The translations under genes and the position numbers were made by a program. Source: Octopus bimaculoides (Eukaryota). From it: 64,000 nucleotides of DNA. Under the pieces are notes generated by a model. It was not told the DNA's origin, searched no databases, and saw only the letters and a program-made list of their open reading frames with translations. Shown here piece after piece: positions 1,155 to 63,545 of this stretch. The stretch is taken from positions 70,752,031 through 70,816,030 of the forward strand of contig NC_068988.1 of NCBI RefSeq assembly GCF_001194135.2, given 5' to 3'. Every line of letters begins with the position of its first letter. Positions within the stretch are counted from its first letter, which is position 1.

Positions 1155-1669
1155 TTGAATCTTCTATGTGTTAACGTAAACCTCCTTGCGGCAATCTAAA
1201 CTTTCAGTTAATCAATTTACCGTTGGCCTGGGGAGTAGCCTGCGATACAAACCTCCCTCGGATATTTACCACTTCTGAAGTTCTGCTTGCTATGAAGCAA
1301 ATGTTACCTGGACCTTATCTACTCCATTCCGTAACTATTGCATTCTTATTCATACACCCGGCAACCCTGACTACCTACTGTGAAATATGAAAAAGAACCT
1401 TTTACAGGTGATCGTACTTCGATACGAAAAAAAAAAAAGAAAAAAAGAAACAAATCCACAATCTTCCGTCTCAATAAACCAATAGAGTCCCTGAATGTTT
1501 TTATATTTACTACAATTCGCTTGAAGCTAACTTTCTTCCTACACCTCGGTGTATATATATATATATGTGNNNNNNNNNNNNNNNNNNNNNNNNNNNNNNN
1601 NNNNNNNNNNNNNNNNNNNNNNNNNNNNNNNNNNNNNNNNNNNNNNNNNNNNNNNNNNNNNNNNNNNNN

Positions 1670-2210
1670 TATACAAATAAACAGAATTCTCACCTCACCA
1701 AAAACGAACACCTTATGTATCTGATAGAGTAAAGGGGAATGAAGTTTATCTGTATATATCTTCATCATAGAAGCGGGAATACTTCCGGGTTGCTTTTGGA
1801 TACACGTGGGGAGAGGAATAAAAATTCAGCATTGAATATATTCCCAAGAATATAATTATTCGTTTAACGAATAATTATGTAAATATAAACGAATAATTAT
1901 ATAAATATAAACGAATAATTATATTCTTCGGAATAGAAATTTCCCTTATGAATTTTTTTACACACTGGCTTCTTGATAAAATACTTGTAAAAGTGTTTTA
2001 TCCCCTTTTGAATTTATTAATCAATTATATTCTTGGGAATATATTCAATGCTGAATTTTTATTCCTGTCCCCACGTGTACCCAAAGGCAACCCGGAAGTA
2101 TTCCCGCTTCTATGATGAAGATATATACAGATAAACTTCATTCCCATTTACTCTATCGGGTACATAAGGTGTTCGTTTTTGGTGAGGTGAGAATTCTGTT
2201 TATTTGTATA
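1670..2210. repeat. 188-bp inverted repeat (1670-1857 / 2023-2210)
   Basis: Arms align with 6 mismatches by hand; the left arm abuts an N gap. Confidence 0.9.
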
Positions 2211-2533
2211 TATTTTTGGAACAATACTATGCTGACGAGCGAAATCTAGATTCATTCTAGTAATCGCGAAATCGGACGATACATAGTTAAGTTTTTTTAA
2301 AAGAAAGTTGGTCGTCTTCTGTTTGGTTGTTTTTCCTCGCATTCGGTACGAAATGTGGTTATTTTGAGAAGTCCAGCGTGTGGCATAATAATTTTTTCTG
2401 TAGTAATGCCGATTATATAAATATAAACGAATAATTATATTCTTGGGAATAGAAATTTCCCTTATGAATTTTTTTACACACTGGCTTCTTGATAAAATTA
2501 TTGTAAAAGAGTTTTATCCCTTTTTGAATTTAT
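1896..2533 (+). repeat. 122-bp direct repeat (1896-2017 / 2412-2533) defining a 516-nt unit
   Basis: Copies align with 5 mismatches, offset 516 nt, and bracket the ribozyme at 2226-2287. Confidence 0.9.
2226..2287 (+). ncRNA. Type I hammerhead ribozyme (canonical core)
   Basis: Stem I ACUAUG/CAUAGU; core CUGACGA 2232-2238; stem II GCGA/UCGC plus CUAGA/UCUAG; GAAA 2268-2271; stem III AUCG-GA-CGAU; cleavage triplet AUA ending at 2281. Confidence 0.85.

Positions 2534-2613
<80 letters not shown>
2534..2613 (+). repeat. (GATA)n microsatellite
   Basis: About 20 tandem GATA units. Confidence 0.97.
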
Positions 2614-2619
2614 CATAAA

Positions 2620-4345
2620 CAAAGGGCGCAAACACCTAGCGCTCAAAGTACAGCTGATTGAGAGGAATTGTTAGCTAAGAGGAATTGACTTATAACAATC
2701 AAGGGTCATATGCCAAACTTCGCTTCCGACCTCATGTGATGCCTGATTAAACCACTTAAATCGGATATCGGTCTGGTGAGCAAGCATATTTTCAGGGAGA
2801 AAAGCGACGACATAGGAAGGCTTCCCGTTTCTCCTTATTGCCTAAATACAATGAAGTAACTTCATGGTTTAAGGCAAACCAGGGTAGAGGCAGAGGAAGG
2901 TTCACCCAATTCGATATTGTTGACTTTTATCCATCGATATCGAAAGAGTCACTAGAAAGAGCGCTTACTTTCGCTATGCCCGTATCACCATTTATACCCC
3001 TATCACCGAAGTTAGTCAACACTCGCGTTAGTGATGAAGGTATAGAGGATATCATGCACGCCAGCAAAACGCTACTGCTCATCAAATGTTCGAAGTGGAT
3101 CAAACTAAATCTTCAATATATCGAATACTCCCATCTCCTTCAATTTGGAGATGGGAGTATTTGACAGCGCGGATATTTGCAGTCTAGTTTATATATACTA
3201 GACACCTTAAGATGTTCCCGTAAGTTCACTTTGGTCTGTATAAAACTGGCGATTTAGCCATCTCTCGAGGTGCAAACGTGTACATCCAGACATTCCCACG
3301 GAGGATCTGAGTCATACCTTTGGCTCGTTTAGTCATAAAGTTACCATTAGGATCAGCATAACTGTAGTTATTTTTTTAGATGTTACTCTTGATTTCGACA
3401 CCTTTTAATACGGGCTCAACTGCAAAGTAAATGCAAAGCTGACATCTATAAAAACAGCCTCATGTCACCCCAATTAATTTATCCAAGACCCATGAGAAAG
3501 GTGTCAGTTTCAGGATTTCGAACCAATCCTCGAATGAAGACATTTTTGAAACAGCGGCTCCCTATTATTACGAGGTTCTGGAAGCCAGCAGTTATAAGGA
3601 CCGCATCATCTATTTGTCGGGACATGACAAGCAAAATAAAAGTGCCACTGTAAGGTGTTTTCATTTGCCCCGCCCCTCTCAATCAATGTCAAAACCTGCA
3701 TGGGAAAGGTCTTCCTTAGATTAGTAAATAAACGTTTCATGGTTCCGTAGGTGAAGGAGATTATTCAATAGACACAACTAAAGGATCTCGTTCAGCTGCA
3801 CACATAGTGTAAAAAGATATAAGGGAACGCCCCAAAACCCTTTACAGAAGCAAAGTACACATATAGGGTTAAGAGTAATTGCCCACTCAATGGTCAATGC
3901 AACACCGAAGCCTTAGCTTATGAAGCTGAGGAGGTGCCTAAAAATAGCAGAAACAACAGAAACGAAAGGACACACATATGGAAATATGGTGTGCCATCTT
4001 GGATTCAGAAAGCGAGATTTTTAGCCGATGTCCTCTGGACAGAAAATTCGTTTTGGAAAACGTGGTTTTGCCATCTGTGGACTAGAAAACAGAAAACTCG
4101 TAGAGTGAATGACCCATTTCAGCCATTGCTGGATCATTTAAGGGGAACCAATTCCTCATTGCATCTCAGAAAGGGACATTTTCAGCTACACTTTCCCGCC
4201 GCCAATTTCACCAAAACTATATATATTCACCTCCATGAGTAAAAAGGCTATGTGCTTCCTTCCGGCCAGCAGGTCTCTTGAGTTGTCTATCTTGCCAAGT
4301 GCAATAGTAAAACCAATGGCAAATCTCTTACCGGTTTTATGTCGT
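2620..4345 (+). mobile_element. Penelope-like retroelement remnant (RT + GIY-YIG), frameshifted
   Basis: Motifs ITIKGHMPNF, KSDIGLVSKHI, EVTSWFK, QFDIVDFYPSISKESL, FLDVTLD, then CPLNGQCNTEALAYEA typical of the PLE linker/GIY-YIG region; many stops and shifts. Confidence 0.8.
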
Positions 4346-4554
4346 AACCAGACAGACAGACAGAATGATAGATAAGTAGATAGATAGGTAGGTAGATAGT
4401 TAGATAGATTGATAGATAGATGACGGAGGGAGGGGCACATACATATGTTTGTATATGTCGCCCTCCATTTTTGGTTCACAGTCATTTTTTTATATCTGCA
4501 CATACATTCTGAAGCCCATACATGAGACAGCATCCATACACACACGCATACACA

Positions 4555-21654: not shown

Positions 21655-22914
21655 CAGCGATTGGAGTAAATAATGGAAACACCTTAAAATTTCAAACAAT
21701 TAATTTTAATATGGGGTAGGACCACTTTTGGCAGTAATTACAGTTTCAATTTTACTCGTACAAAATTTGAATTTTCCAAAGGAATGTTTGTCTATTCTTC
21801 AGCTAAAACAGTCTCCAGTTCTTGTAGTGATGATGGTGGTTGATATCGACTCCTTACTTGTTTTTCTAAAATGCACAATAAACGTTCAATAATATTGATA
21901 TCTGGGGACTCTGGTCGCCAGATAAGATGTTCAACTTCACTAGAATGTTCTTCGTGCCATAAAGTAACAAATTTAGCTGTGTGAATTGGTGCAATATCAT
22001 CCCGAAAGATTGCGTTTCCCTCCAGAAACAGTTCTGCAACTATAGGATGAATTTGATCAGATAAAATGCTTAAATAGTCTTGACTACTAATTCTGCCATG
22101 AAGGGAAACCAGTGGGCCGGCGGATTTCCACGAAATACCCCCACACACCCCCTCCCCCAGATAATCGCAGATCTTTCTCCATGTTTAACAGTTGGAAGAA
22201 GGCAGTCTAGGTCAAATGCTTCTTTTTGGCTGTCTCCACACGTATACTCGGCCGGTGGTCGGAAGTAAGGTAAAAGATGACTCGTCCGAGAAAACAACAT
22301 TCTTCCACTGCTCTGGGGACCAATTCCGTAAGTTTTTATTCCACTTTAAACGTTACGCAACGTTTGTTTTTGAAAGTAGTCGTTTTTTGATTACAGCACT
22401 CCCGTGAAATCCGGCTTTGTGCAGCTTCTGGCGAACAGTTTTGGTGGAAACTGGGCTCTCGATGTAGTCAATAAGCTCTCCAGTAATTTTGGGAGCTGTA
22501 CTTTTGTGATCCTTTCTAACAATCCGTGTAAGAGTCCGACGATCTCTATCTGAGAGTTTTGGTTTTATTCTGGAGTTTTGTTTCCCTCTTTCTCAAAGGC
22601 TGTCATTAATTTCGAGACAGTACTTCTTGATACACCAAATATTTCGGCTGTTTTCGTTACGCTAGCGCCTGAAATACGAGCAACAACAATTTGACTACTT
22701 TGAAAGTCCGATAGATCTGTCATTTTAATGAATTTTAATTAACTTTTTTTGATGATAACTGAAAGGAAACAGCAATTTTAGCAAAACATATTAAGCAAGA
22801 CTAATAATAAATTAAAACAAAAAACAAAAATAAACAAGCTTTTAATGGTTTTATAGGTATTTCAAAAGTATGATGCTAGGATGCTAGGTGTTTCCATTAC
22901 TTTGTCCAACCCTG
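21655..22914 (-). mobile_element. Tc1-like DNA transposon, full length, disrupted transposase
   Basis: Imperfect ~29-bp TIRs ending TAATGGAAACACC with TA flanks; ATG at 22723 MTDLSDFQSSQIVVARISGASVTKTAEIFGVSRSTVS (HTH); DDIAPIH...WRPESPDINIIE. Confidence 0.92.
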
Positions 22915-25689: not shown

Positions 25690-27010
25690 GTAATATTTTT
25701 ATCGATACGTTGTCTTGTTACAGGAACCCACATAATATATATTTTCATCTACCACTATATACCTATAACATTCCTCATCAGATGTAGGGAAACAGTTAAG
25801 TCATTGGTAGAGTTGATGGAGATGTTACTAGTCTGGTTTACAGTTTTCCCTCTTTTGACAACCATATAGCAACATTTATCCGGACCAGATTCCAGCCCTA
25901 TATACTTTGAGAATGTTGTAACCAGGTCAAGGCTCTTTTTCAATTCATGCATATTCTTGACAAATAGTTTCAAGGCATCCACAAAGAAACAGTGTGTAAT
26001 TTTGTTATTTCTGTTTCCTTGTGAACCAGTGAGATATCGTTCAGACTTCCTTAACATGAATGACAAGGGGTTTACAGAAAGTATAAACAGCATCGCAGAG
26101 AGGCTGTCTCCTTAGAATATACCACTGTGATGTATTTTATCAGTGATAATACAACCACTCCTTAAATTTTACTTCAAAATGGTAGCCCACGATGAAACCA
26201 GATGAGCTATAGCTTTGACTAAACTCACTGGAAGTTTGGCAAGTCGAAGGGCTTCTAGCAGAATTAAAGGCTTTCTTGGAGTCCAGCCTCATTGACACTA
26301 AGTTCTTCTTATGCTCCCACACTCCTGACATTACAGTTTTGTTTATTAACAATTGTTCGGTACAACCCCCGATCCCCTTCTTCCCATGTGTTTGTTCTTC
26401 TCTGATTATACTATTACTTTCTCAATGGTTGTGGAGGAAGGATTTTAAACTTGTTGCATATATTTTATACATTAATTTCTGGCATGTGGGTGGTTCTGCT
26501 TTTGGGGGTCACTTTTGTCTCTGCCAGAGCTAAGCAGTGTGGTATGCTACTATTCCCACTGAGAGCTTGATAAGATATGGTCGGTAGAAGGTTAGATTTT
26601 TTACCTGTATCCAGTAATGAAGTCTACTCAAGGTGCATTTCCCTACTAAATTTTCTGGATTATAGTCACAATGGCATTACCATCAATGCTGTAATTCTTG
26701 TGTGTAATGCAGGGACATTTATAGCTTCGAATTTATATCAGCTATAGAGCGACTGGGTTAAATTCCATTTTTTCACTCCAGATATTCCTCCAGAAGGTGT
26801 CTTTCTCTTCTCATAAAGGACTTTCTATGATATTTACTGATTCTCCTCTCATGTCTCTGTACAATACTACCTGGTCCCTGTTAAATTCTATGTTGTTTTT
26901 CTTTCTCCTCTGATGTCAGAGTTTCTCACTGACAGATTTTAGCTCCTGCTAGAGGGTTATCAGTTCGCATTTGAGTATTCTCTTTTTGCTATCTACAAAC
27001 ATCACTTCTA
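25690..27010 (-). mobile_element. R4/Dong-like LINE RT remnant
   Basis: MLINKTVM...RLDSKKAFNSA; LFILSVNPLSFML; ITHCFFVDALKLF; IGLESGPDKC. Confidence 0.8.
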
Positions 27011-34402: not shown

Positions 34403-34785
34403 TGTTGTTGGCACTCCGTCGCTTACGACGTCGAGGGTTCCAGTTGATCCGATCAACGGAACGGCCTGCTCGTGAAATTAACGTGCAAGTGGCTGAGCAC
34501 TCCACAGACACGTGTACCCTTAACGTAGTTCTCGGGGATATTCAGCGTGACACAGTGTGACAAGGCTGACCCTTTGAATTACAGGCACAACAGAAACAGG
34601 AAGTAAGAGTGAGAGAAAGTTGTGGTGAAAGAGTGCAGCAGGGTTCACCACCATTCCCTGCCAGAGCCACGTGGAGCTTTAGGTGTTTTCGCTCAATAAA
34701 CACTCACAACGCCCGGTCTGGGAATCGAAACCGCGATCCTATAACTGCGAGTCCGCTGCCCTAACCACTGGGCCATTGCGCCTCC
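34403..34785 (-). mobile_element. Full-length tRNA-derived SINE family C with 11-bp TSD
   Basis: Head with A box TGGCCCAGTGG and B box GGTTTCGATTCCC; short (CAA)n tail; TCAATTGGCGC repeated at 34392-34402 and 34786-34796. Confidence 0.9.
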
Positions 34786-35232
34786 TCAATTGGCGCAATA
34801 AGAGATTATACACCTGTTAGAAAGGCTAAAAACCTATAATGACAACGTTGTTATAAACTATGATTATATTTTTCAGCATGTTTCCAGATGTAAAATATTC
34901 AAGATTACGATATTGCTTATATCTAAGTCACATATAAAATCCCTAACATGATTCATGATTCATGATTTATTATGAGAACAAAATTTTAATTTTGTTCTCA
35001 TAATGATGAATTAGTTAGTTGTTAAACAATTGACAGCAGTTAAGGCTTAAAATTATTGAATGAATTTGAACACAGCAAGAAAACGCACACTTCACAAGCA
35101 AGATTTGCAGTGAAATACAGCATGGATCACTGTAATCACTTCCAATTTTCTGTGGTAAAGTTCAATATCAGGATATCCTATGTAAAAGACTATTGTAGAT
35201 AATTTCGGACCATATACCACAATTTTGTTGGT

Positions 35233-37829: not shown

Positions 37830-38937
37830 AAGGCATGAAACGAAGGACAGTAATGATGCTAAGGTATTTGAAAGATCAGAACATCCAAGAAAACCCTCCA
37901 AAGGTACGAACAGGGAGGAGGTGGAAAGCGGAAGAGGCAGTAAACAGGGCATTCGGAAAGCTAAGGCATGCCGATATATTCGGAGCGATGCAAGAAGCAA
38001 GAGCCTGTCTAGAGTTGCACAATTTCAAGCCATTTTGTAAAAGACATGAAATAAGTGAGAAAGGAGGAAGAAGAAAGGCGAAATGTACATTTGGTGCAAT
38101 GTAATCAACTAGGAGAGTGCATGAGATTGGAGGAATATGTAGTCAGTCGTAGAATATCATGGAAGGGACTTTGGGCTTGGGAACAAGCAAGAACATACTT
38201 CCTGATCAAGTCTATCTTCGACGTTTTACTTTCACCGGCGAACAACTGATGAATGTAGATGCGGAAAGAAAGTGACGGTGAGACATGTTCTGTCAATCTG
38301 CAGGCTAAGACTAGACAGATATACATGACTTCACAATCAAGTCATCGGTGTCATAGGCGCAGAACTCATTGAGAAGATCGAGGGATATATTAGGGGAGAA
38401 TGCTCAAAAGCGGAAAAGCGCGGAAAAATATACTTCCAGAAGGTGGTAAAAGGACATAAGGCCAGGCCTTGAAATAAAATATACGAAACAGACGAAAGAT
38501 GGAAGCGATACTGGAAGCTGGCCGCGGATTTGGGAAAACTGTTAATATTTCCACTCATAAACACATCAAAAAGACCGGACTTAATCCTATGAAACACAGA
38601 ACGGAAAATTGGAATTTTGCTAGAGTTGACAGTGCCATGGGAAGAGAACATCGCTAATGCAGAGCAACGGAAGAAGAAGAGGTATGAGAGACTAATCGAA
38701 GAGTGCGGAGAACATGGATGGACTGTCGAGTATTACCACCTGGCTGTGGGGGCTAGAGGCTTCATTGAAAGTAAAATGATGACGTTATTTAAAAGAAGGT
38801 TTGCATTTTCGAGCTCAGAGCTGGGAAAAGTAATAAGGAGGATACAGGAACCAATCGAAAAAGCCAGCTTCTATATATGGCTGAAGCGAGAAGACCCAAA
38901 ATGGTCTGAAAGCCTTAACGTGCCGACTGGAAAATAG
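37830..38937 (+). mobile_element. HERO-like (R2-superfamily, REL endonuclease) retrotransposon, 5'-truncated
   Basis: GRRWKAEEAV..LRHADI; SWKGLWAWE..FLIKSIFDVLLSPANN; CRCG...HVLSIC...HNQV; RPDL; LELTVPWEENI...KRYERL...VGARGF. Confidence 0.85.
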
Positions 38938-62275: not shown

Positions 62276-63545
62276 ATAGGATGCGGTGAATAAATTGTCG
62301 CCTAAATTACGCGAAAATGAAAGTAACACTGACATCTCATTTTAAGACATATTCACCAAGATTACGTTAAAATGTCTGAAAAATACAAAAGAGTAAATTT
62401 ATTCTATGAAATCGGCATTGGCTTCAACCACGGTCTCCATGCGACTTCGGAATCTCCTGCAACTCTTCTGGACGATCTCTTTGTTTAAGTTGGTCAATGT
62501 CATAATCCTTGCCTTCAGTTCATTTTTGATGTTACAAGTTTTGTTGGTCTGCCGCTCAAATGCGCACCACACATAATAATAATCAAGGGGGTTGTAGTCT
62601 GGGAAGTCAGGTGGTCAGACGTTAGGGGTGATGTGGTGGCAGAAATTGTTTTACAGCCATGACTGGGTTCCCCTGGTTGTGTGGTATGGTGGAGAATCCT
62701 GTTGCCAAACATAGGGTCTTCCGGCAGTCACTCTCTTGATACAGGATATCACTACCTCCTCCAGGCACTTGATATAGGCCTCCGTGTTGAGTGTGAGGCC
62801 GTATGGAAAGTTTAATGGAGGCATTACATCGCCATGGTGTTGACTGGATCTTTTATTTTTATCACTCTTTGTACACTTTTTGGGGACACGGCAAGCCAAC
62901 GGTTGTTCTGAGTGTTCACCATCTGATCCTAGCAGATTTTTTTCTTGTCAGAGAAAAGCCAAAGCATGTTCGGTTGGAGGGGATGCCTGAGTTACTTCAA
63001 AAGCTTCGTAGCGCGGTCTTTTGTCTTGTTGTTGATGGCTTAGGATAAATATTGGCTCTTTTCTCATCTTCTATGAGGAATAGCGAATGTCTTCATGCAT
63101 CACCTGCCTGATAAGAAACTCAGACACTCCCATGTTCCTGGCGATAGAGCTGATTAACTTGGAAGGATCGTTGTCAATCATGGCTTGAATCTCACCAACA
63201 AATTCAGGTTTTTTTTTTTTATCAGAACGATCAGAATGAGTCTTTCGATCTGTTGTACTTTCGTAATCACCATTAGACTCATCCAACAGTTTCTGAATCC
63301 TCTGCACTGTCCTCAGATTGACACCTAAACACTGATATATTCGTATTGGAGCTTCCAGGACGAATGTCAAGCAGGACAGCAGGTTGTTTCCGACTTTCTG
63401 ACAGACTGAATTGCGTCACGGTGCTGTTTTTCACACAGATGATGTCCAACTCTACAATAGTGTGTAGTCTCAAAATCAAAAACAAACAATGAGCATGCAT
63501 GAAAGTACAAATATAAAAGGGAGACAAATTACCCATCAGACCCTG
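62276..63545 (-). mobile_element. DD37D (maT-like) DNA transposon, near full length, disrupted
   Basis: WQQD-37 aa-D (QQDSPPYH...PDYNPLDY) counted by hand with two in-frame stops; imperfect termini TAGGATGCGGTGAATAAATTGTC / GACAAATTACCCATCAGACCCTG-TA. Confidence 0.88.

What the first reader, a model, noticed from the sequence alone, without database searches (positions are those of the whole stretch)
1670..2533. Canonical hammerhead ribozyme inside a 516-nt direct-repeat unit with an inverted partial copy (retrozyme-like element)
Seen: a complete type I hammerhead at 2226-2287 (6-bp stem I, CUGACGA, two-part stem II, GAAA, 4-bp stem III, AUA site) lies between two 122-bp direct repeats 516 nt apart. 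A 188-bp inverted copy of the segment just upstream of the ribozyme precedes the unit. No ORF was recognised in it. Established: Penelope-like elements and non-LTR retrozymes carry type I hammerheads in tandem or partially inverted repeats, and multimeric transcripts self-cleave into monomers or circles. Inference: a non-autonomous ribozyme retroelement family, with fuller stems than the usual minimal metazoan motifs. Whether it has been described is unknown to me.
Basis: partly seen in the sequence, partly recalled or inferred. Interest (0 to 1): 0.88.

Follow-up and report, generated by a model that had tools for sequence, protein, structure and literature searches.

The report
Hammerhead ribozyme in Penelope-type repeat
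A textbook-looking self-cleaving hammerhead RNA motif sits in a small non-coding repeat arranged the way Penelope-like retroelements insert, next to a dead Penelope-like element; it is a plausible new example of a well-known kind of animal "retrozyme", and I could not test activity or copy number.

Summary
A type I hammerhead with every invariant core base lies at 2226-2287 (+). The 122-nt direct repeats are 516 nt apart (96% identical). A 188-nt inverted copy (97%) precedes the unit.

A motif this complete is the only one in the 64 kb window. It occurred in 0 of 300 simulated windows.

Three corrections:
- The inverted arm starts exactly at a 100-N assembly gap, so it is cut off.
- A 4-bp stem III would leave a 2-nt loop. 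Realistically it is 3 bp, or an intermolecular helix in a double hammerhead, which is the predicted optimum for two copies.
- No Rfam hammerhead model detects the motif, even at E<=10.

The layout is an inverted copy head-to-head with a partial tandem, no ORF, no poly(A), and microsatellites on both sides. That is the published insertion architecture of Penelope-like elements (PLEs). Directly downstream (2640-4242) is a decayed, 5'-truncated PLE of the "Hydra" clade.

Best reading: a non-autonomous, PLE-mobilised retrozyme-like element. With one ribozyme, this locus alone cannot release monomers.

No homologous copies could be retrieved, so conservation, covariation, copy number and cleavage are untested. 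It is a new member of a known kind, of modest interest.

The parts
1552..1569 (.). (TA)n-like microsatellite on the left edge of the assembly gap; possible left target flank
   Evidence: Sequence read (GTGTATATATATATATATGTG). Hydra-clade PLEs are reported to insert into (TA)n (PMC8557442).
1570..1669 (.). Assembly gap of 100 N that cuts the inverted copy
   Evidence: N run 1570-1669. The inverted arm starts at 1670.
1670..1862 (-). Inverted copy of unit positions about 2-193 (equivalent to 2019/2023-2210). Its outer end, which could include a second ribozyme on the minus strand, is lost in the gap.
   Evidence: I1: 188 nt, 97%; 6 substitutions, 4 of them transitions, so two genuinely diverged copies.
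1863..1867 (.). TTTAA spacer, the centre of the head-to-head junction
   Evidence: and sequence: both arms begin CGAATAATTAT on either side of it.
1868..2017 (+). 5'-truncated upstream partial copy. It holds 22-nt tandem units (1866-1924, 2.7 copies) and direct repeat 1 (1896-2017), which equals the last 122 nt of the unit.
   Evidence: (D5).
2018..2533 (+). The 516-nt non-coding unit ('X'), GC 33%. It ends ...GAATTTAT directly against (ATAG)20 and has no poly(A).
   Evidence: As a circle the monomer folds to -125.1 kcal/mol, z = -4.6 against 200 dinucleotide shuffles.
2218..2295 (+). Type I hammerhead domain including the distal part of helix I. The core motif is 2226-2287, and the predicted cleavage is between A2281 and C2282.
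2412..2533 (+). Direct repeat 2 (3' end of the unit)
   Evidence: 96% identical to 1896-2017.
2534..2614 (.). (ATAG)20 microsatellite between the unit and the PLE remnant
   Evidence: 2534-2613, period 4, 20 copies, 100% matches.
2640..4242 (+). Decayed, 5'-truncated Penelope-like element of the Hydra clade (RT plus C-terminal GIY-YIG), with many stops and frameshifts. It is context, not part of the ribozyme unit.
   Evidence: tblastn of P0011 aa 169-588 onto 2665-3930, E = 1e-23. 118 protein relatives. Relatives carry RWK/DKT/CxCX5C/CxxC/CxH motifs that match the clade description.
4349..4421 (.). (GACA)n/(GATA)n microsatellite on the far side of the PLE remnant

Best explanation
Window 1670-2533 is one compound insertion of a small (about 516 nt), non-coding, Penelope-like-element-dependent retroelement, that is, an animal 'non-LTR retrozyme' or non-autonomous PLE derivative. 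It carries a canonical-core type I hammerhead on its sense strand.

Shown:
- The motif, the repeats and their geometry.
- The absence of coding capacity.
- The microsatellite flanks.
- The neighbouring Hydra-clade PLE remnant.

Inferred mechanism: the element is transcribed as a multimer from tandem copies elsewhere in the genome. Two neighbouring hammerheads pair through their nearly palindromic helix III (AUCG-GA-CGAU) into a double hammerhead and cut after the AUA site (A2281). The 516-nt monomers, with 5'-OH and 2',3'-cyclic phosphate ends, can be circularised by a host tRNA ligase. A PLE reverse transcriptase / GIY-YIG endonuclease supplied in trans copies the RNA into microsatellite targets. 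That produces the characteristic 5'-truncated partial tandem plus an adjacent inverted copy.

This particular locus has 1.24-1.3 units and one sense ribozyme. A transcript through it would be cut once, not released as a monomer. It is most likely a dead-end daughter insertion a few percent diverged in age.
For: (1) All invariant core positions are present, along with the G10.1-C11.1 pair. Helix I is 6 bp and helix II is 4 bp, each followed by a loop. That is the geometry given for canonical metazoan hammerheads whose helices I and II interact (PMC4209133).

(2) It is the only such motif in 64 kb, and 0 of 300 simulated windows reach it.

(3) Two hammerhead domains cofold into the double-hammerhead form, with both cores free, at -44.7 against 2 x -19.9 kcal/mol. 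Helix III alone does not fold. Short palindromic helix III and dimeric action are the norm for animal type I and PLE hammerheads.

(4) The architecture is a partial tandem plus an inverted copy joined head-to-head, with microsatellites on both sides and an assembly gap. This matches the published description of PLE insertions, including the assembly problems (PMC8557442).

(5) There is no ORF with relatives, GC is 33% and there is no poly(A). The 516-nt unit lies within the reported retrozyme range: 150-450 bp and 51-972 bp.

(6) The ribozyme is on the strand that the 5'-truncated partial copy implies is the RNA sense strand, the same strand as the neighbouring PLE ORF.

(7) A Hydra-clade PLE remnant lies in the same (GATA)n tract. 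PLE machinery has therefore acted at this site in this genome, and retrozymes are reported to co-occur with PLEs and derive from them.

(8) The monomer is unusually structured, z = -4.6, as described for retrozyme RNAs.
Against: - No Rfam hammerhead model reports the motif, even at E<=10 on 106 nt. I attribute this to the 29-nt helix II, but I could not test that.
- No second copy is available anywhere: none elsewhere in the window, none in the protein-space search, none in metagenome, viral or prokaryote collections. There is therefore no conservation or covariation evidence and no copy number.
- There is only one ribozyme and about 1.3 units, so this is not a tandem array.
- The insertion boundaries (phase 2017/2018) do not coincide with the cleavage site (2281/2282).
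- The ribozyme is not inside the repeated (pLTR-like) segment.
- The 3' end of the neighbouring PLE remnant shows no similarity to the unit.
- The hammerhead-like motifs I saw in other Hydra-clade PLE contigs are of the minimal type, unlike this one.
- The minimum-free-energy fold of the monomer replaces helix III by CUGA:UCGG pairing: -20.2 against -16.9 kcal/mol for the hammerhead fold.
Confidence: 0.62

Rival explanations
1. The segment is the non-coding terminal region (UTR/pLTR) of a longer autonomous PLE, not a short non-autonomous element. On this reading, 2018-2533 is a copy 5'-truncated to its last 516 nt, joined in tandem to an even shorter truncated copy (1868-2017) and an inverted truncated copy. 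The hammerhead is then the PLE's own terminal ribozyme.
For: PLE insertions are mostly 5'-truncated and arranged as partial tandems with inverted copies, and their hammerheads sit in terminal non-coding regions. A PLE ORF remnant of the same orientation lies 130 nt downstream. In L003 and L004 a hammerhead-like core lies 200-300 nt upstream of the Hydra-clade ORF.
Against: No part of 1670-2533 shows coding similarity to PLE C-termini in any frame. The 3' flank of the adjacent remnant (4243-4348) has no similarity to the unit. The inner end of the inverted copy falls within about 5 nt of the tandem-junction phase, which is easier to explain if about 516 nt is the full element. That boundary is blurred, however, by an internal 19-nt repeat.
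Confidence: 0.2
2. The hammerhead is a chance match inside an unrelated palindromic or foldback repeat, for example a replication-slippage inverted duplication in a microsatellite-rich region or a foldback/MITE-type DNA element. It has no ribozyme function.
For: By extrapolation (about 1e-3 per 64-kb window), a gigabase genome should hold some chance motifs of this quality, and the first stage selected the window for the motif. Rfam is silent. There is no comparative support. The region is AT-rich with many local repeats.
Against: Features not required by the descriptor are also present: G10.1-C11.1, a further 5-bp distal helix II, a further 5-bp distal helix I, and identical 3x3 loops at the canonical 6-bp and 4-bp distances. 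The motif is on the inferred sense strand. A foldback or MITE model does not explain a direct repeat with one copy inside and one outside the inverted arms, whereas the PLE model explains all the repeats. A PLE remnant shares the same microsatellite.
Confidence: 0.13
3. The inverted arm, and possibly the 516-nt repeat, is an assembly artefact: a palindromic contig end next to a scaffold gap.
For: The arm begins at the first base after an N100 gap. PLE-type structures are known to trouble short-read assemblies. The window has 11 gaps.
Against: The arms differ by 6 substitutions and a block of about 150 nt, and the direct repeats differ by 5 substitutions. Assembler-made hairpins are normally identical. 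The hammerhead itself lies in unique sequence, away from the gap.
Confidence: 0.05

Closest known systems
Metazoan non-LTR retrozymes (Cervera & de la Pena 2020, PMC7229834; Li, Clavereau & Pollet 2026 preprint, 10.64898/2026.07.22.740005)
   Same: Both have a type I hammerhead with canonical core and helix sizes. Both are short, AT-rich, non-coding units without LTR/PBS/PPT or poly(A), with head-to-tail repetition and a highly self-paired monomer RNA. Both co-occur with PLEs.
   Different: Here there are only about 1.3 units and one ribozyme, not an array. The unit of 516 nt is above the 170-400 nt of the 2020 paper, though inside the 51-972 bp of the 2026 preprint. Helix II is extended to 29 nt through an internal loop. 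An inverted copy is attached. Expression, circles and copy number are unknown.
Hammerheads in the pseudo-LTRs of Penelope-like elements (Cervera & de la Pena 2014, PMC4209133; Craig et al. 2021, PMC8557442)
   Same: The insertion architecture is the same: partial tandem, adjacent inverted 5'-truncated copy, microsatellite target and assembly trouble. Helix III is nearly palindromic, implying dimeric action. The strand is the same as a neighbouring PLE ORF, and the adjacent remnant belongs to the Hydra clade, in which hammerheads are reported to be universal.
   Different: PLE hammerheads are mostly 'minimal': helix I of 4-5 bp, no real helix III, and an extra base before 10.1. They lie inside the repeated pLTR. 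This one has full helices I and II with loops, no extra base, lies between the repeats, and is not contiguous with an ORF.
Schistosoma Sm-alpha, newt satellite 2 and other classical animal hammerhead repeats
   Same: Type I topology, 6-bp helix I and 4-bp helix II followed by loops, weak helix III, and activity expected from multimeric transcripts.
   Different: I detected no sequence similarity or membership. There is no pol III/tRNA-like part (no tRNA). Loop 2 is replaced by an internal loop plus a further 5-bp helix.
Plant LTR retrozymes (PMC4918200)
   Same: Non-autonomous, ribozyme-bearing, with direct repeats flanking a non-coding body.
   Different: Plant elements carry type III hammerheads inside about 350-bp LTRs, with PBS/PPT and 4-bp target-site duplications. 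Here a type I ribozyme lies between 122-nt repeats that are better read as a partial tandem.

Membership tests
Hammerhead ribozyme (consensus core, Hertel numbering) | C3 U4 G5 A6 N7 G8 A9 ... G12 A13 A14, the A15.1-U16.1 pair, and H17 not G | tested here: met
   CUGACGA 2232-2238, GAA 2268-2270, A2271-U2280, A2281.
Hammerhead ribozyme (consensus core, Hertel numbering) | Three helices around the core, with type I topology (helix I open) | tested here: met
   Helix I is 6 bp (+5 distal) and helix II is 4 bp (+5 distal). Helix III is 3 bp as a monomer, or 4+4 bp with tandem G.A as a dimer.
Hammerhead ribozyme (consensus core, Hertel numbering) | Site-specific self-cleavage | not testable with these tools
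   Needs in vitro transcription of monomer and dimer constructs.
Rfam hammerhead families (clan searched by cmscan) | Score at or above the gathering threshold of a curated covariance model | tested here: not met
   No hit at gathering score, nor at E<=10 on 1031 nt or 106 nt.
Canonical metazoan type I hammerhead | Helix I of about 6 bp and helix II of about 4 bp, each followed by a loop able to make the tertiary contact; short, palindromic helix III | tested here: met
   Identical 3x3 AAU/UAA internal loops follow 6 bp (helix I) and 4 bp (helix II). Helix III is AUCG-GA-CGAU. The definition is from PMC4209133. The conserved loop nucleotides of the classical family could not be compared.
Non-LTR retrozyme | Short non-coding unit with low GC and no LTR/PBS/PPT | tested here: met
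   516 nt, GC 33%, no ORF with relatives.
Non-LTR retrozyme | Tandem array in which each unit carries a hammerhead (two or more ribozymes) | tested here: not met
   There are 1.24-1.3 units and one ribozyme on the + strand. A second ribozyme, if present, would be inverted and hidden in the gap.
Non-LTR retrozyme | Multi-copy family in the genome | not testable with these tools
   There is no other copy in the window, and the source genome was not searchable.
Non-LTR retrozyme | Linear and circular monomer RNAs in vivo | not testable with these tools
   Needs northern blots or divergent-primer RT-PCR.
Penelope-like element insertion (pLTR architecture) | Partial head-to-tail tandem, with an inverted 5'-truncated copy adjacent upstream | tested here: met
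   compared with the description in PMC8557442.
Penelope-like element insertion (pLTR architecture) | Hammerhead located inside the repeated pLTR that flanks an RT-EN ORF | tested here: not met
   The ribozyme (2226-2287) lies between the direct repeats (1896-2017, 2412-2533). No ORF lies between them. The nearby ORF remnant is separated by (ATAG)20, and its 3' flank is unrelated.
Penelope-like element insertion (pLTR architecture) | Insertion into microsatellite targets | tested here: met
   (ATAG)20 abuts the 3' end, and (TA)n borders the gap on the left.
Hydra clade of PLEs (for the neighbouring remnant 2640-4242) | RWK and DKT motifs, CxCX5C linker, C-terminal GIY-YIG without CCHH, and flanking CxxC / CxH | tested here: met
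   The motifs were read in full-length relatives P0011, P0110 and P0028 and compared with the clade description. The remnant aligns to P0011 aa 169-588. No phylogeny was made, and the remnant itself has lost several motifs.

The most novel reading that the evidence does not exclude
This could be the first glimpse of a retrozyme family mobilised by Hydra-clade PLEs. Its hammerhead uses a design not covered by the current Rfam models: helix II runs on through a 3x3 internal loop (AAU/UAA) that is duplicated at the canonical distance in helix I. The tertiary contact would then be made between two internal loops rather than between a loop and a bulge. Its DNA copies also have ends that do not coincide with the cleavage site, which would argue for reverse transcription from a circle or an uncleaved transcript.
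Probability: 0.2. Interest if true: 0.45.

Novelty: new member of a known kind. Interest (0 to 1): 0.3.

Why it matters
If confirmed, it adds one more ribozyme-bearing non-autonomous retroelement to a class already known to be abundant in invertebrate genomes. Three points go modestly beyond the ordinary:
- The physical association with a Hydra-clade PLE, for which retrozyme partners have hardly been described.
- A long, two-part helix II that hides the motif from all Rfam hammerhead models. Such variants may be under-counted in genome surveys.
- Insertion ends that are out of phase with the cleavage site, which bears on what RNA form serves as the template.

None of this changes current understanding.

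Tried and rejected
(1) Rfam cmscan at three scales found no hammerhead. The only weak hits were plant miRNA-hairpin models matching the long inverted repeat, which I rejected as generic hairpin matches.

(2) I looked for other copies of the unit through spurious ORFs. A composite six-frame query against 5.8 billion proteins gave nothing at E<=0.01. An exact look-up of the 64-aa antisense ORF gave nothing.

(3) An exact 24-mer of the ribozyme found nothing in metagenome contigs.

(4) A degenerate core-plus-helix-III pattern gave 44 hits in metagenome, 4 in viral and 23 in prokaryote contigs. None forms helices I and II, and none resembles the unit. These are chance matches.

(5) The first protein search with the stop-riddled PLE remnant found nothing. 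Pfam finds nothing in the remnant or in its full-length relatives. The remnant was classified only through an exhaustive HMMER search plus published motif descriptions.

(6) I tried to identify the source organism through a Tc1-like fragment, SRA run numbers in the literature and contig records.

(7) A tRNA or pol III SINE origin is not supported: no tRNA was found.

(8) The 'defined 5' terminus' argument for a 516-nt element was weakened after I saw that the inner end of the inverted arm lies in an internal 19-nt repeat and that both arms start with CGAATAATTAT.

Full report
OBSERVATION.

The window is eukaryote-like: GC 35%, eleven N gaps, dense microsatellites and transposon debris.

At 2226-2287 on the + strand the sequence reads ACUAUG-CUGACGA-GCGA AAU CUAGA UUCAU UCUAG UAA UCGC-GAA-A UCG GA CGA U-A-CAUAGU. 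Every invariant hammerhead position is present:
- C3-A9, G12-A14, the A15.1-U16.1 pair and H17 = A.
- The usual G10.1-C11.1 pair.
- A G2.1-C1.1 pair closing a 6-bp helix I.

Helix II is 4 bp, then a 3x3 internal loop (AAU/UAA), then 5 more bp and a 5-nt loop. Helix I, after its 6 bp, has the same 3x3 AAU/UAA loop and then 5 more pairs (GGAAC/GUUUU, 2218-2222/2291-2295).

My descriptor scan of both strands finds this motif and no other, with either strict or relaxed settings. In 300 simulated windows with the same dinucleotide statistics there were 14 hits at stems >=4/3/2, 2 at >=5/3/3 and none at the observed 6/4/3. That corresponds to roughly 1e-3 per window, so the motif alone would not exclude a chance hit somewhere in a large genome. 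The distal helices and the matching loops were not required by the descriptor, and they make chance much less likely.

The repeats are as described:
- Direct repeats 1896-2017 and 2412-2533 (122 nt, 96%, spacing 516).
- Inverted repeat 1670-1857 against 2023-2210 (188 nt, six differences).

CORRECTIONS TO THE OBSERVATION.

(a) The left arm of the inverted repeat starts at the first base after a 100-N gap (1570-1669). Its length of 188 nt is therefore set by the assembly. If it continues, the missing part would include an inverted copy of the ribozyme.

(b) The whole of 1670-2210 is an imperfect palindrome centred on TTTAA (1863-1867). Both arms begin CGAATAATTAT. The left arm lacks about 150 nt that the right arm has: two 22-nt tandem units and the stretch between two copies of a 19-nt internal repeat.

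(c) A 4-bp stem III would leave a 2-nt loop. As a monomer it is 3 bp with a GGAC loop, and it is not predicted to form on its own. The hammerhead secondary structure is 3.3 kcal/mol above the minimum-energy fold, which pairs CUGA with UCGG instead.

(d) No Rfam hammerhead model reports the motif, at gathering score or at E<=10, even when only 106 nt are searched.

WHAT IT IS.

The unit 2018-2533 has no ORF longer than 64 aa lying wholly inside it. A composite query of all its reading frames has no relative among 5.8 billion proteins. It is AT-rich (GC 33%), ends without poly(A) directly against (ATAG)20, and is preceded by a 5'-truncated copy of its own 3' end and by an inverted copy.

This is the layout that Craig et al. 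describe for Penelope-like elements (PMC8557442):
- Heavy 5' truncation.
- Partial tandems forming pseudo-LTRs.
- Insertion bias towards microsatellites.
- Resulting assembly problems.

The six substitutions between the inverted arms and the five between the direct repeats show that these are real, slightly diverged copies rather than an assembler-made hairpin.

THE NEIGHBOUR.

Downstream of the (ATAG)20 tract, 2640-4242 (+) is a stop-riddled ORF. Pfam and a word-indexed search found nothing. An exhaustive HMMER search with 2760-3161 found 118 relatives.

The full-length relatives are P0011 (713 aa), P0110 (697 aa) and P0028 (658 aa). They carry RW(K/R), DKT, YRDD, a CxCX5C linker, a C-terminal GIY-YIG domain, and CxxC and CxH motifs. 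These are the diagnostic features given for the 'Hydra' clade of PLEs.

P0011 residues 169-588 align to 2665-3930 across three frames (E = 1e-23). The remnant is thus 5'-truncated by about 170 codons. It is bounded by (ATAG)n on one side and (GACA/GATA)n on the other, as if it had inserted into the same microsatellite that the ribozyme unit abuts.

The remnant is much older than the ribozyme unit, and its 3' flank shows no similarity to the unit. I treat the two as separate insertions that used the same kind of target.

In two contigs that carry intact Hydra-clade ORFs (L003, L004), and in L077, I could read hammerhead-core-like motifs of the minimal PLE type with palindromic helix III. Rfam does not report these either. 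They differ from the window's motif, which has full helices I and II.

HOW IT MOST LIKELY WORKS.

Cervera and de la Pena describe canonical animal type I hammerheads as follows:
- A 6-bp helix I and a 4-bp helix II that interact through their loops.
- A very short, palindromic helix III.
- As a result, single motifs cleave poorly, while two motifs in a tandem transcript fold into an active double hammerhead.

The window's motif fits this. The loops follow 6 bp and 4 bp. Helix III is AUCG-GA-CGAU. Two copies are predicted to cofold into exactly the double-hammerhead form, with an intermolecular 4+4-bp helix III around tandem G.A and both cores unpaired. The energy is -44.7 kcal/mol, against -39.8 for two separate monomers. 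AUA is a natural cleavage triplet (abstract of PMC1636495, listed).

The 516-nt monomer, folded as a circle, is far more structured than shuffled controls (z = -4.6), as reported for retrozyme RNAs.

I therefore infer the retrozyme/PLE cycle:
- Multimeric transcripts from arrays elsewhere in the genome.
- Dimer-mediated cleavage after A2281.
- Possible circularisation by a tRNA ligase.
- Reverse transcription and microsatellite-targeted integration by a PLE enzyme in trans.

The anatomy is shown. The steps of the cycle are inference.

At this locus there is one sense ribozyme in about 1.3 units, so the locus itself cannot yield monomers. The long inverted repeat would make any read-through transcript a 190-bp hairpin. 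That is why weak plant miRNA-precursor matches appeared, and I give them no weight.

WHAT DOES NOT FIT, OR IS OPEN.

- The ribozyme lies between the direct repeats, not in them as in described pLTRs.
- The insertion ends (phase 2017/2018, 3' end at 2533) are about 250 nt out of phase with the cleavage site. The template was therefore not simply the self-cleaved linear monomer.
- I cannot distinguish a true 516-nt element from the 5'-truncated tail of a longer PLE.
- Above all, I could not retrieve any homologous copy. There is none in the window, none in protein space, and none in metagenome, viral or prokaryotic contigs. The 71 pattern matches there are chance, and none forms helices I and II.
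- The source organism could not be identified.

Conservation, covariation, copy number and activity therefore remain untested.

COMPARISON AND VERDICT.

By function and anatomy this is closest to metazoan non-LTR retrozymes and to PLE-associated hammerheads. Recent work argues these are one lineage. It meets the core, topology, size, non-coding and architecture criteria. It fails the 'tandem array with two or more ribozymes' criterion and the 'ribozyme inside the pLTR' criterion at this locus, and it is not recognised by the Rfam models.

I rate it a probable new member of a known kind. Interest is modest, because thousands of such motifs are known per invertebrate genome.

Noticed in passing
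window 2640-4242 (+): Decayed, 5'-truncated Hydra-clade Penelope-like element (RT plus GIY-YIG), bounded by (ATAG)n and (GACA/GATA)n. Neither it nor its intact relatives (P0011, P0110, P0028) get any Pfam domain hit.
   Followed up: yes
L003 ~469-515; L004 ~94-140; L077 6798-6842: Contigs from other samples that carry Hydra-clade PLE ORFs have minimal hammerhead-core-like motifs with a palindromic helix III (for example ACUCGAGU) 200-300 nt upstream of the ORF or just after a truncated copy. They were read by eye or with a relaxed descriptor, and Rfam reports none. In L004 the motif straddles the end of a 103-nt terminal repeat (1-103 = 2445-2547).
   Followed up: partly
window 2218-2295: The same 3x3 internal loop (5'-AAU/5'-UAA) occurs in helix I after 6 bp and in helix II after 4 bp. 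This may be a loop-loop tertiary contact of an unusual form.
   Followed up: no
window 2117-2216: A hairpin of about 100 nt with a stem of about 20 bp lies inside the unit, immediately upstream of the ribozyme (circular fold; D9 repeat).
   Followed up: no
window 1866-1924: A 22-nt tandem repeat (AACGAATAATTATATAAATATA, 2.7 copies) sits at the head-to-head junction. The second unit has only about 1.8 copies at 2410-2440.
   Followed up: partly
window 21795-22345 (-), 62654-63415 (-), 25758-26421 (-), 38593-38934 (+): Other transposon debris is present. There is a Tc1/mariner-type DDE_3 fragment (Pfam E = 1e-5) whose relatives are up to 79% identical, and an RVT_1 fragment. Two further TE-like ORF fragments have no Pfam hit.
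   Followed up: partly
window, 11 N runs (1570, 7838, 24276, 24772, 33101, 36695, 43384, 45112, 47620, 54754, 62227): Several gaps whose flanks were seen lie next to simple-sequence repeats. This suggests a short-read scaffold in which repeat structures may be collapsed.
   Followed up: no
P0001 (288 aa, best hit): This database 'protein' consists of about four tandem copies of a 70-aa fragment around the Hydra-clade RT motif FDIVDFYPSI. A piece of such a PLE has apparently become a roughly 210-bp tandem repeat in some genome.
   Followed up: no
L001/L002 (Logan SRR11869391/SRR11869394): A decayed copy of the same PLE lineage (77% nucleotide identity to window 2849-2953) occurs in sequencing runs of an unidentified, presumably related organism. 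Its 3' end matches window 34759-34788 at 93%, possibly a shared short repeat.
   Followed up: partly
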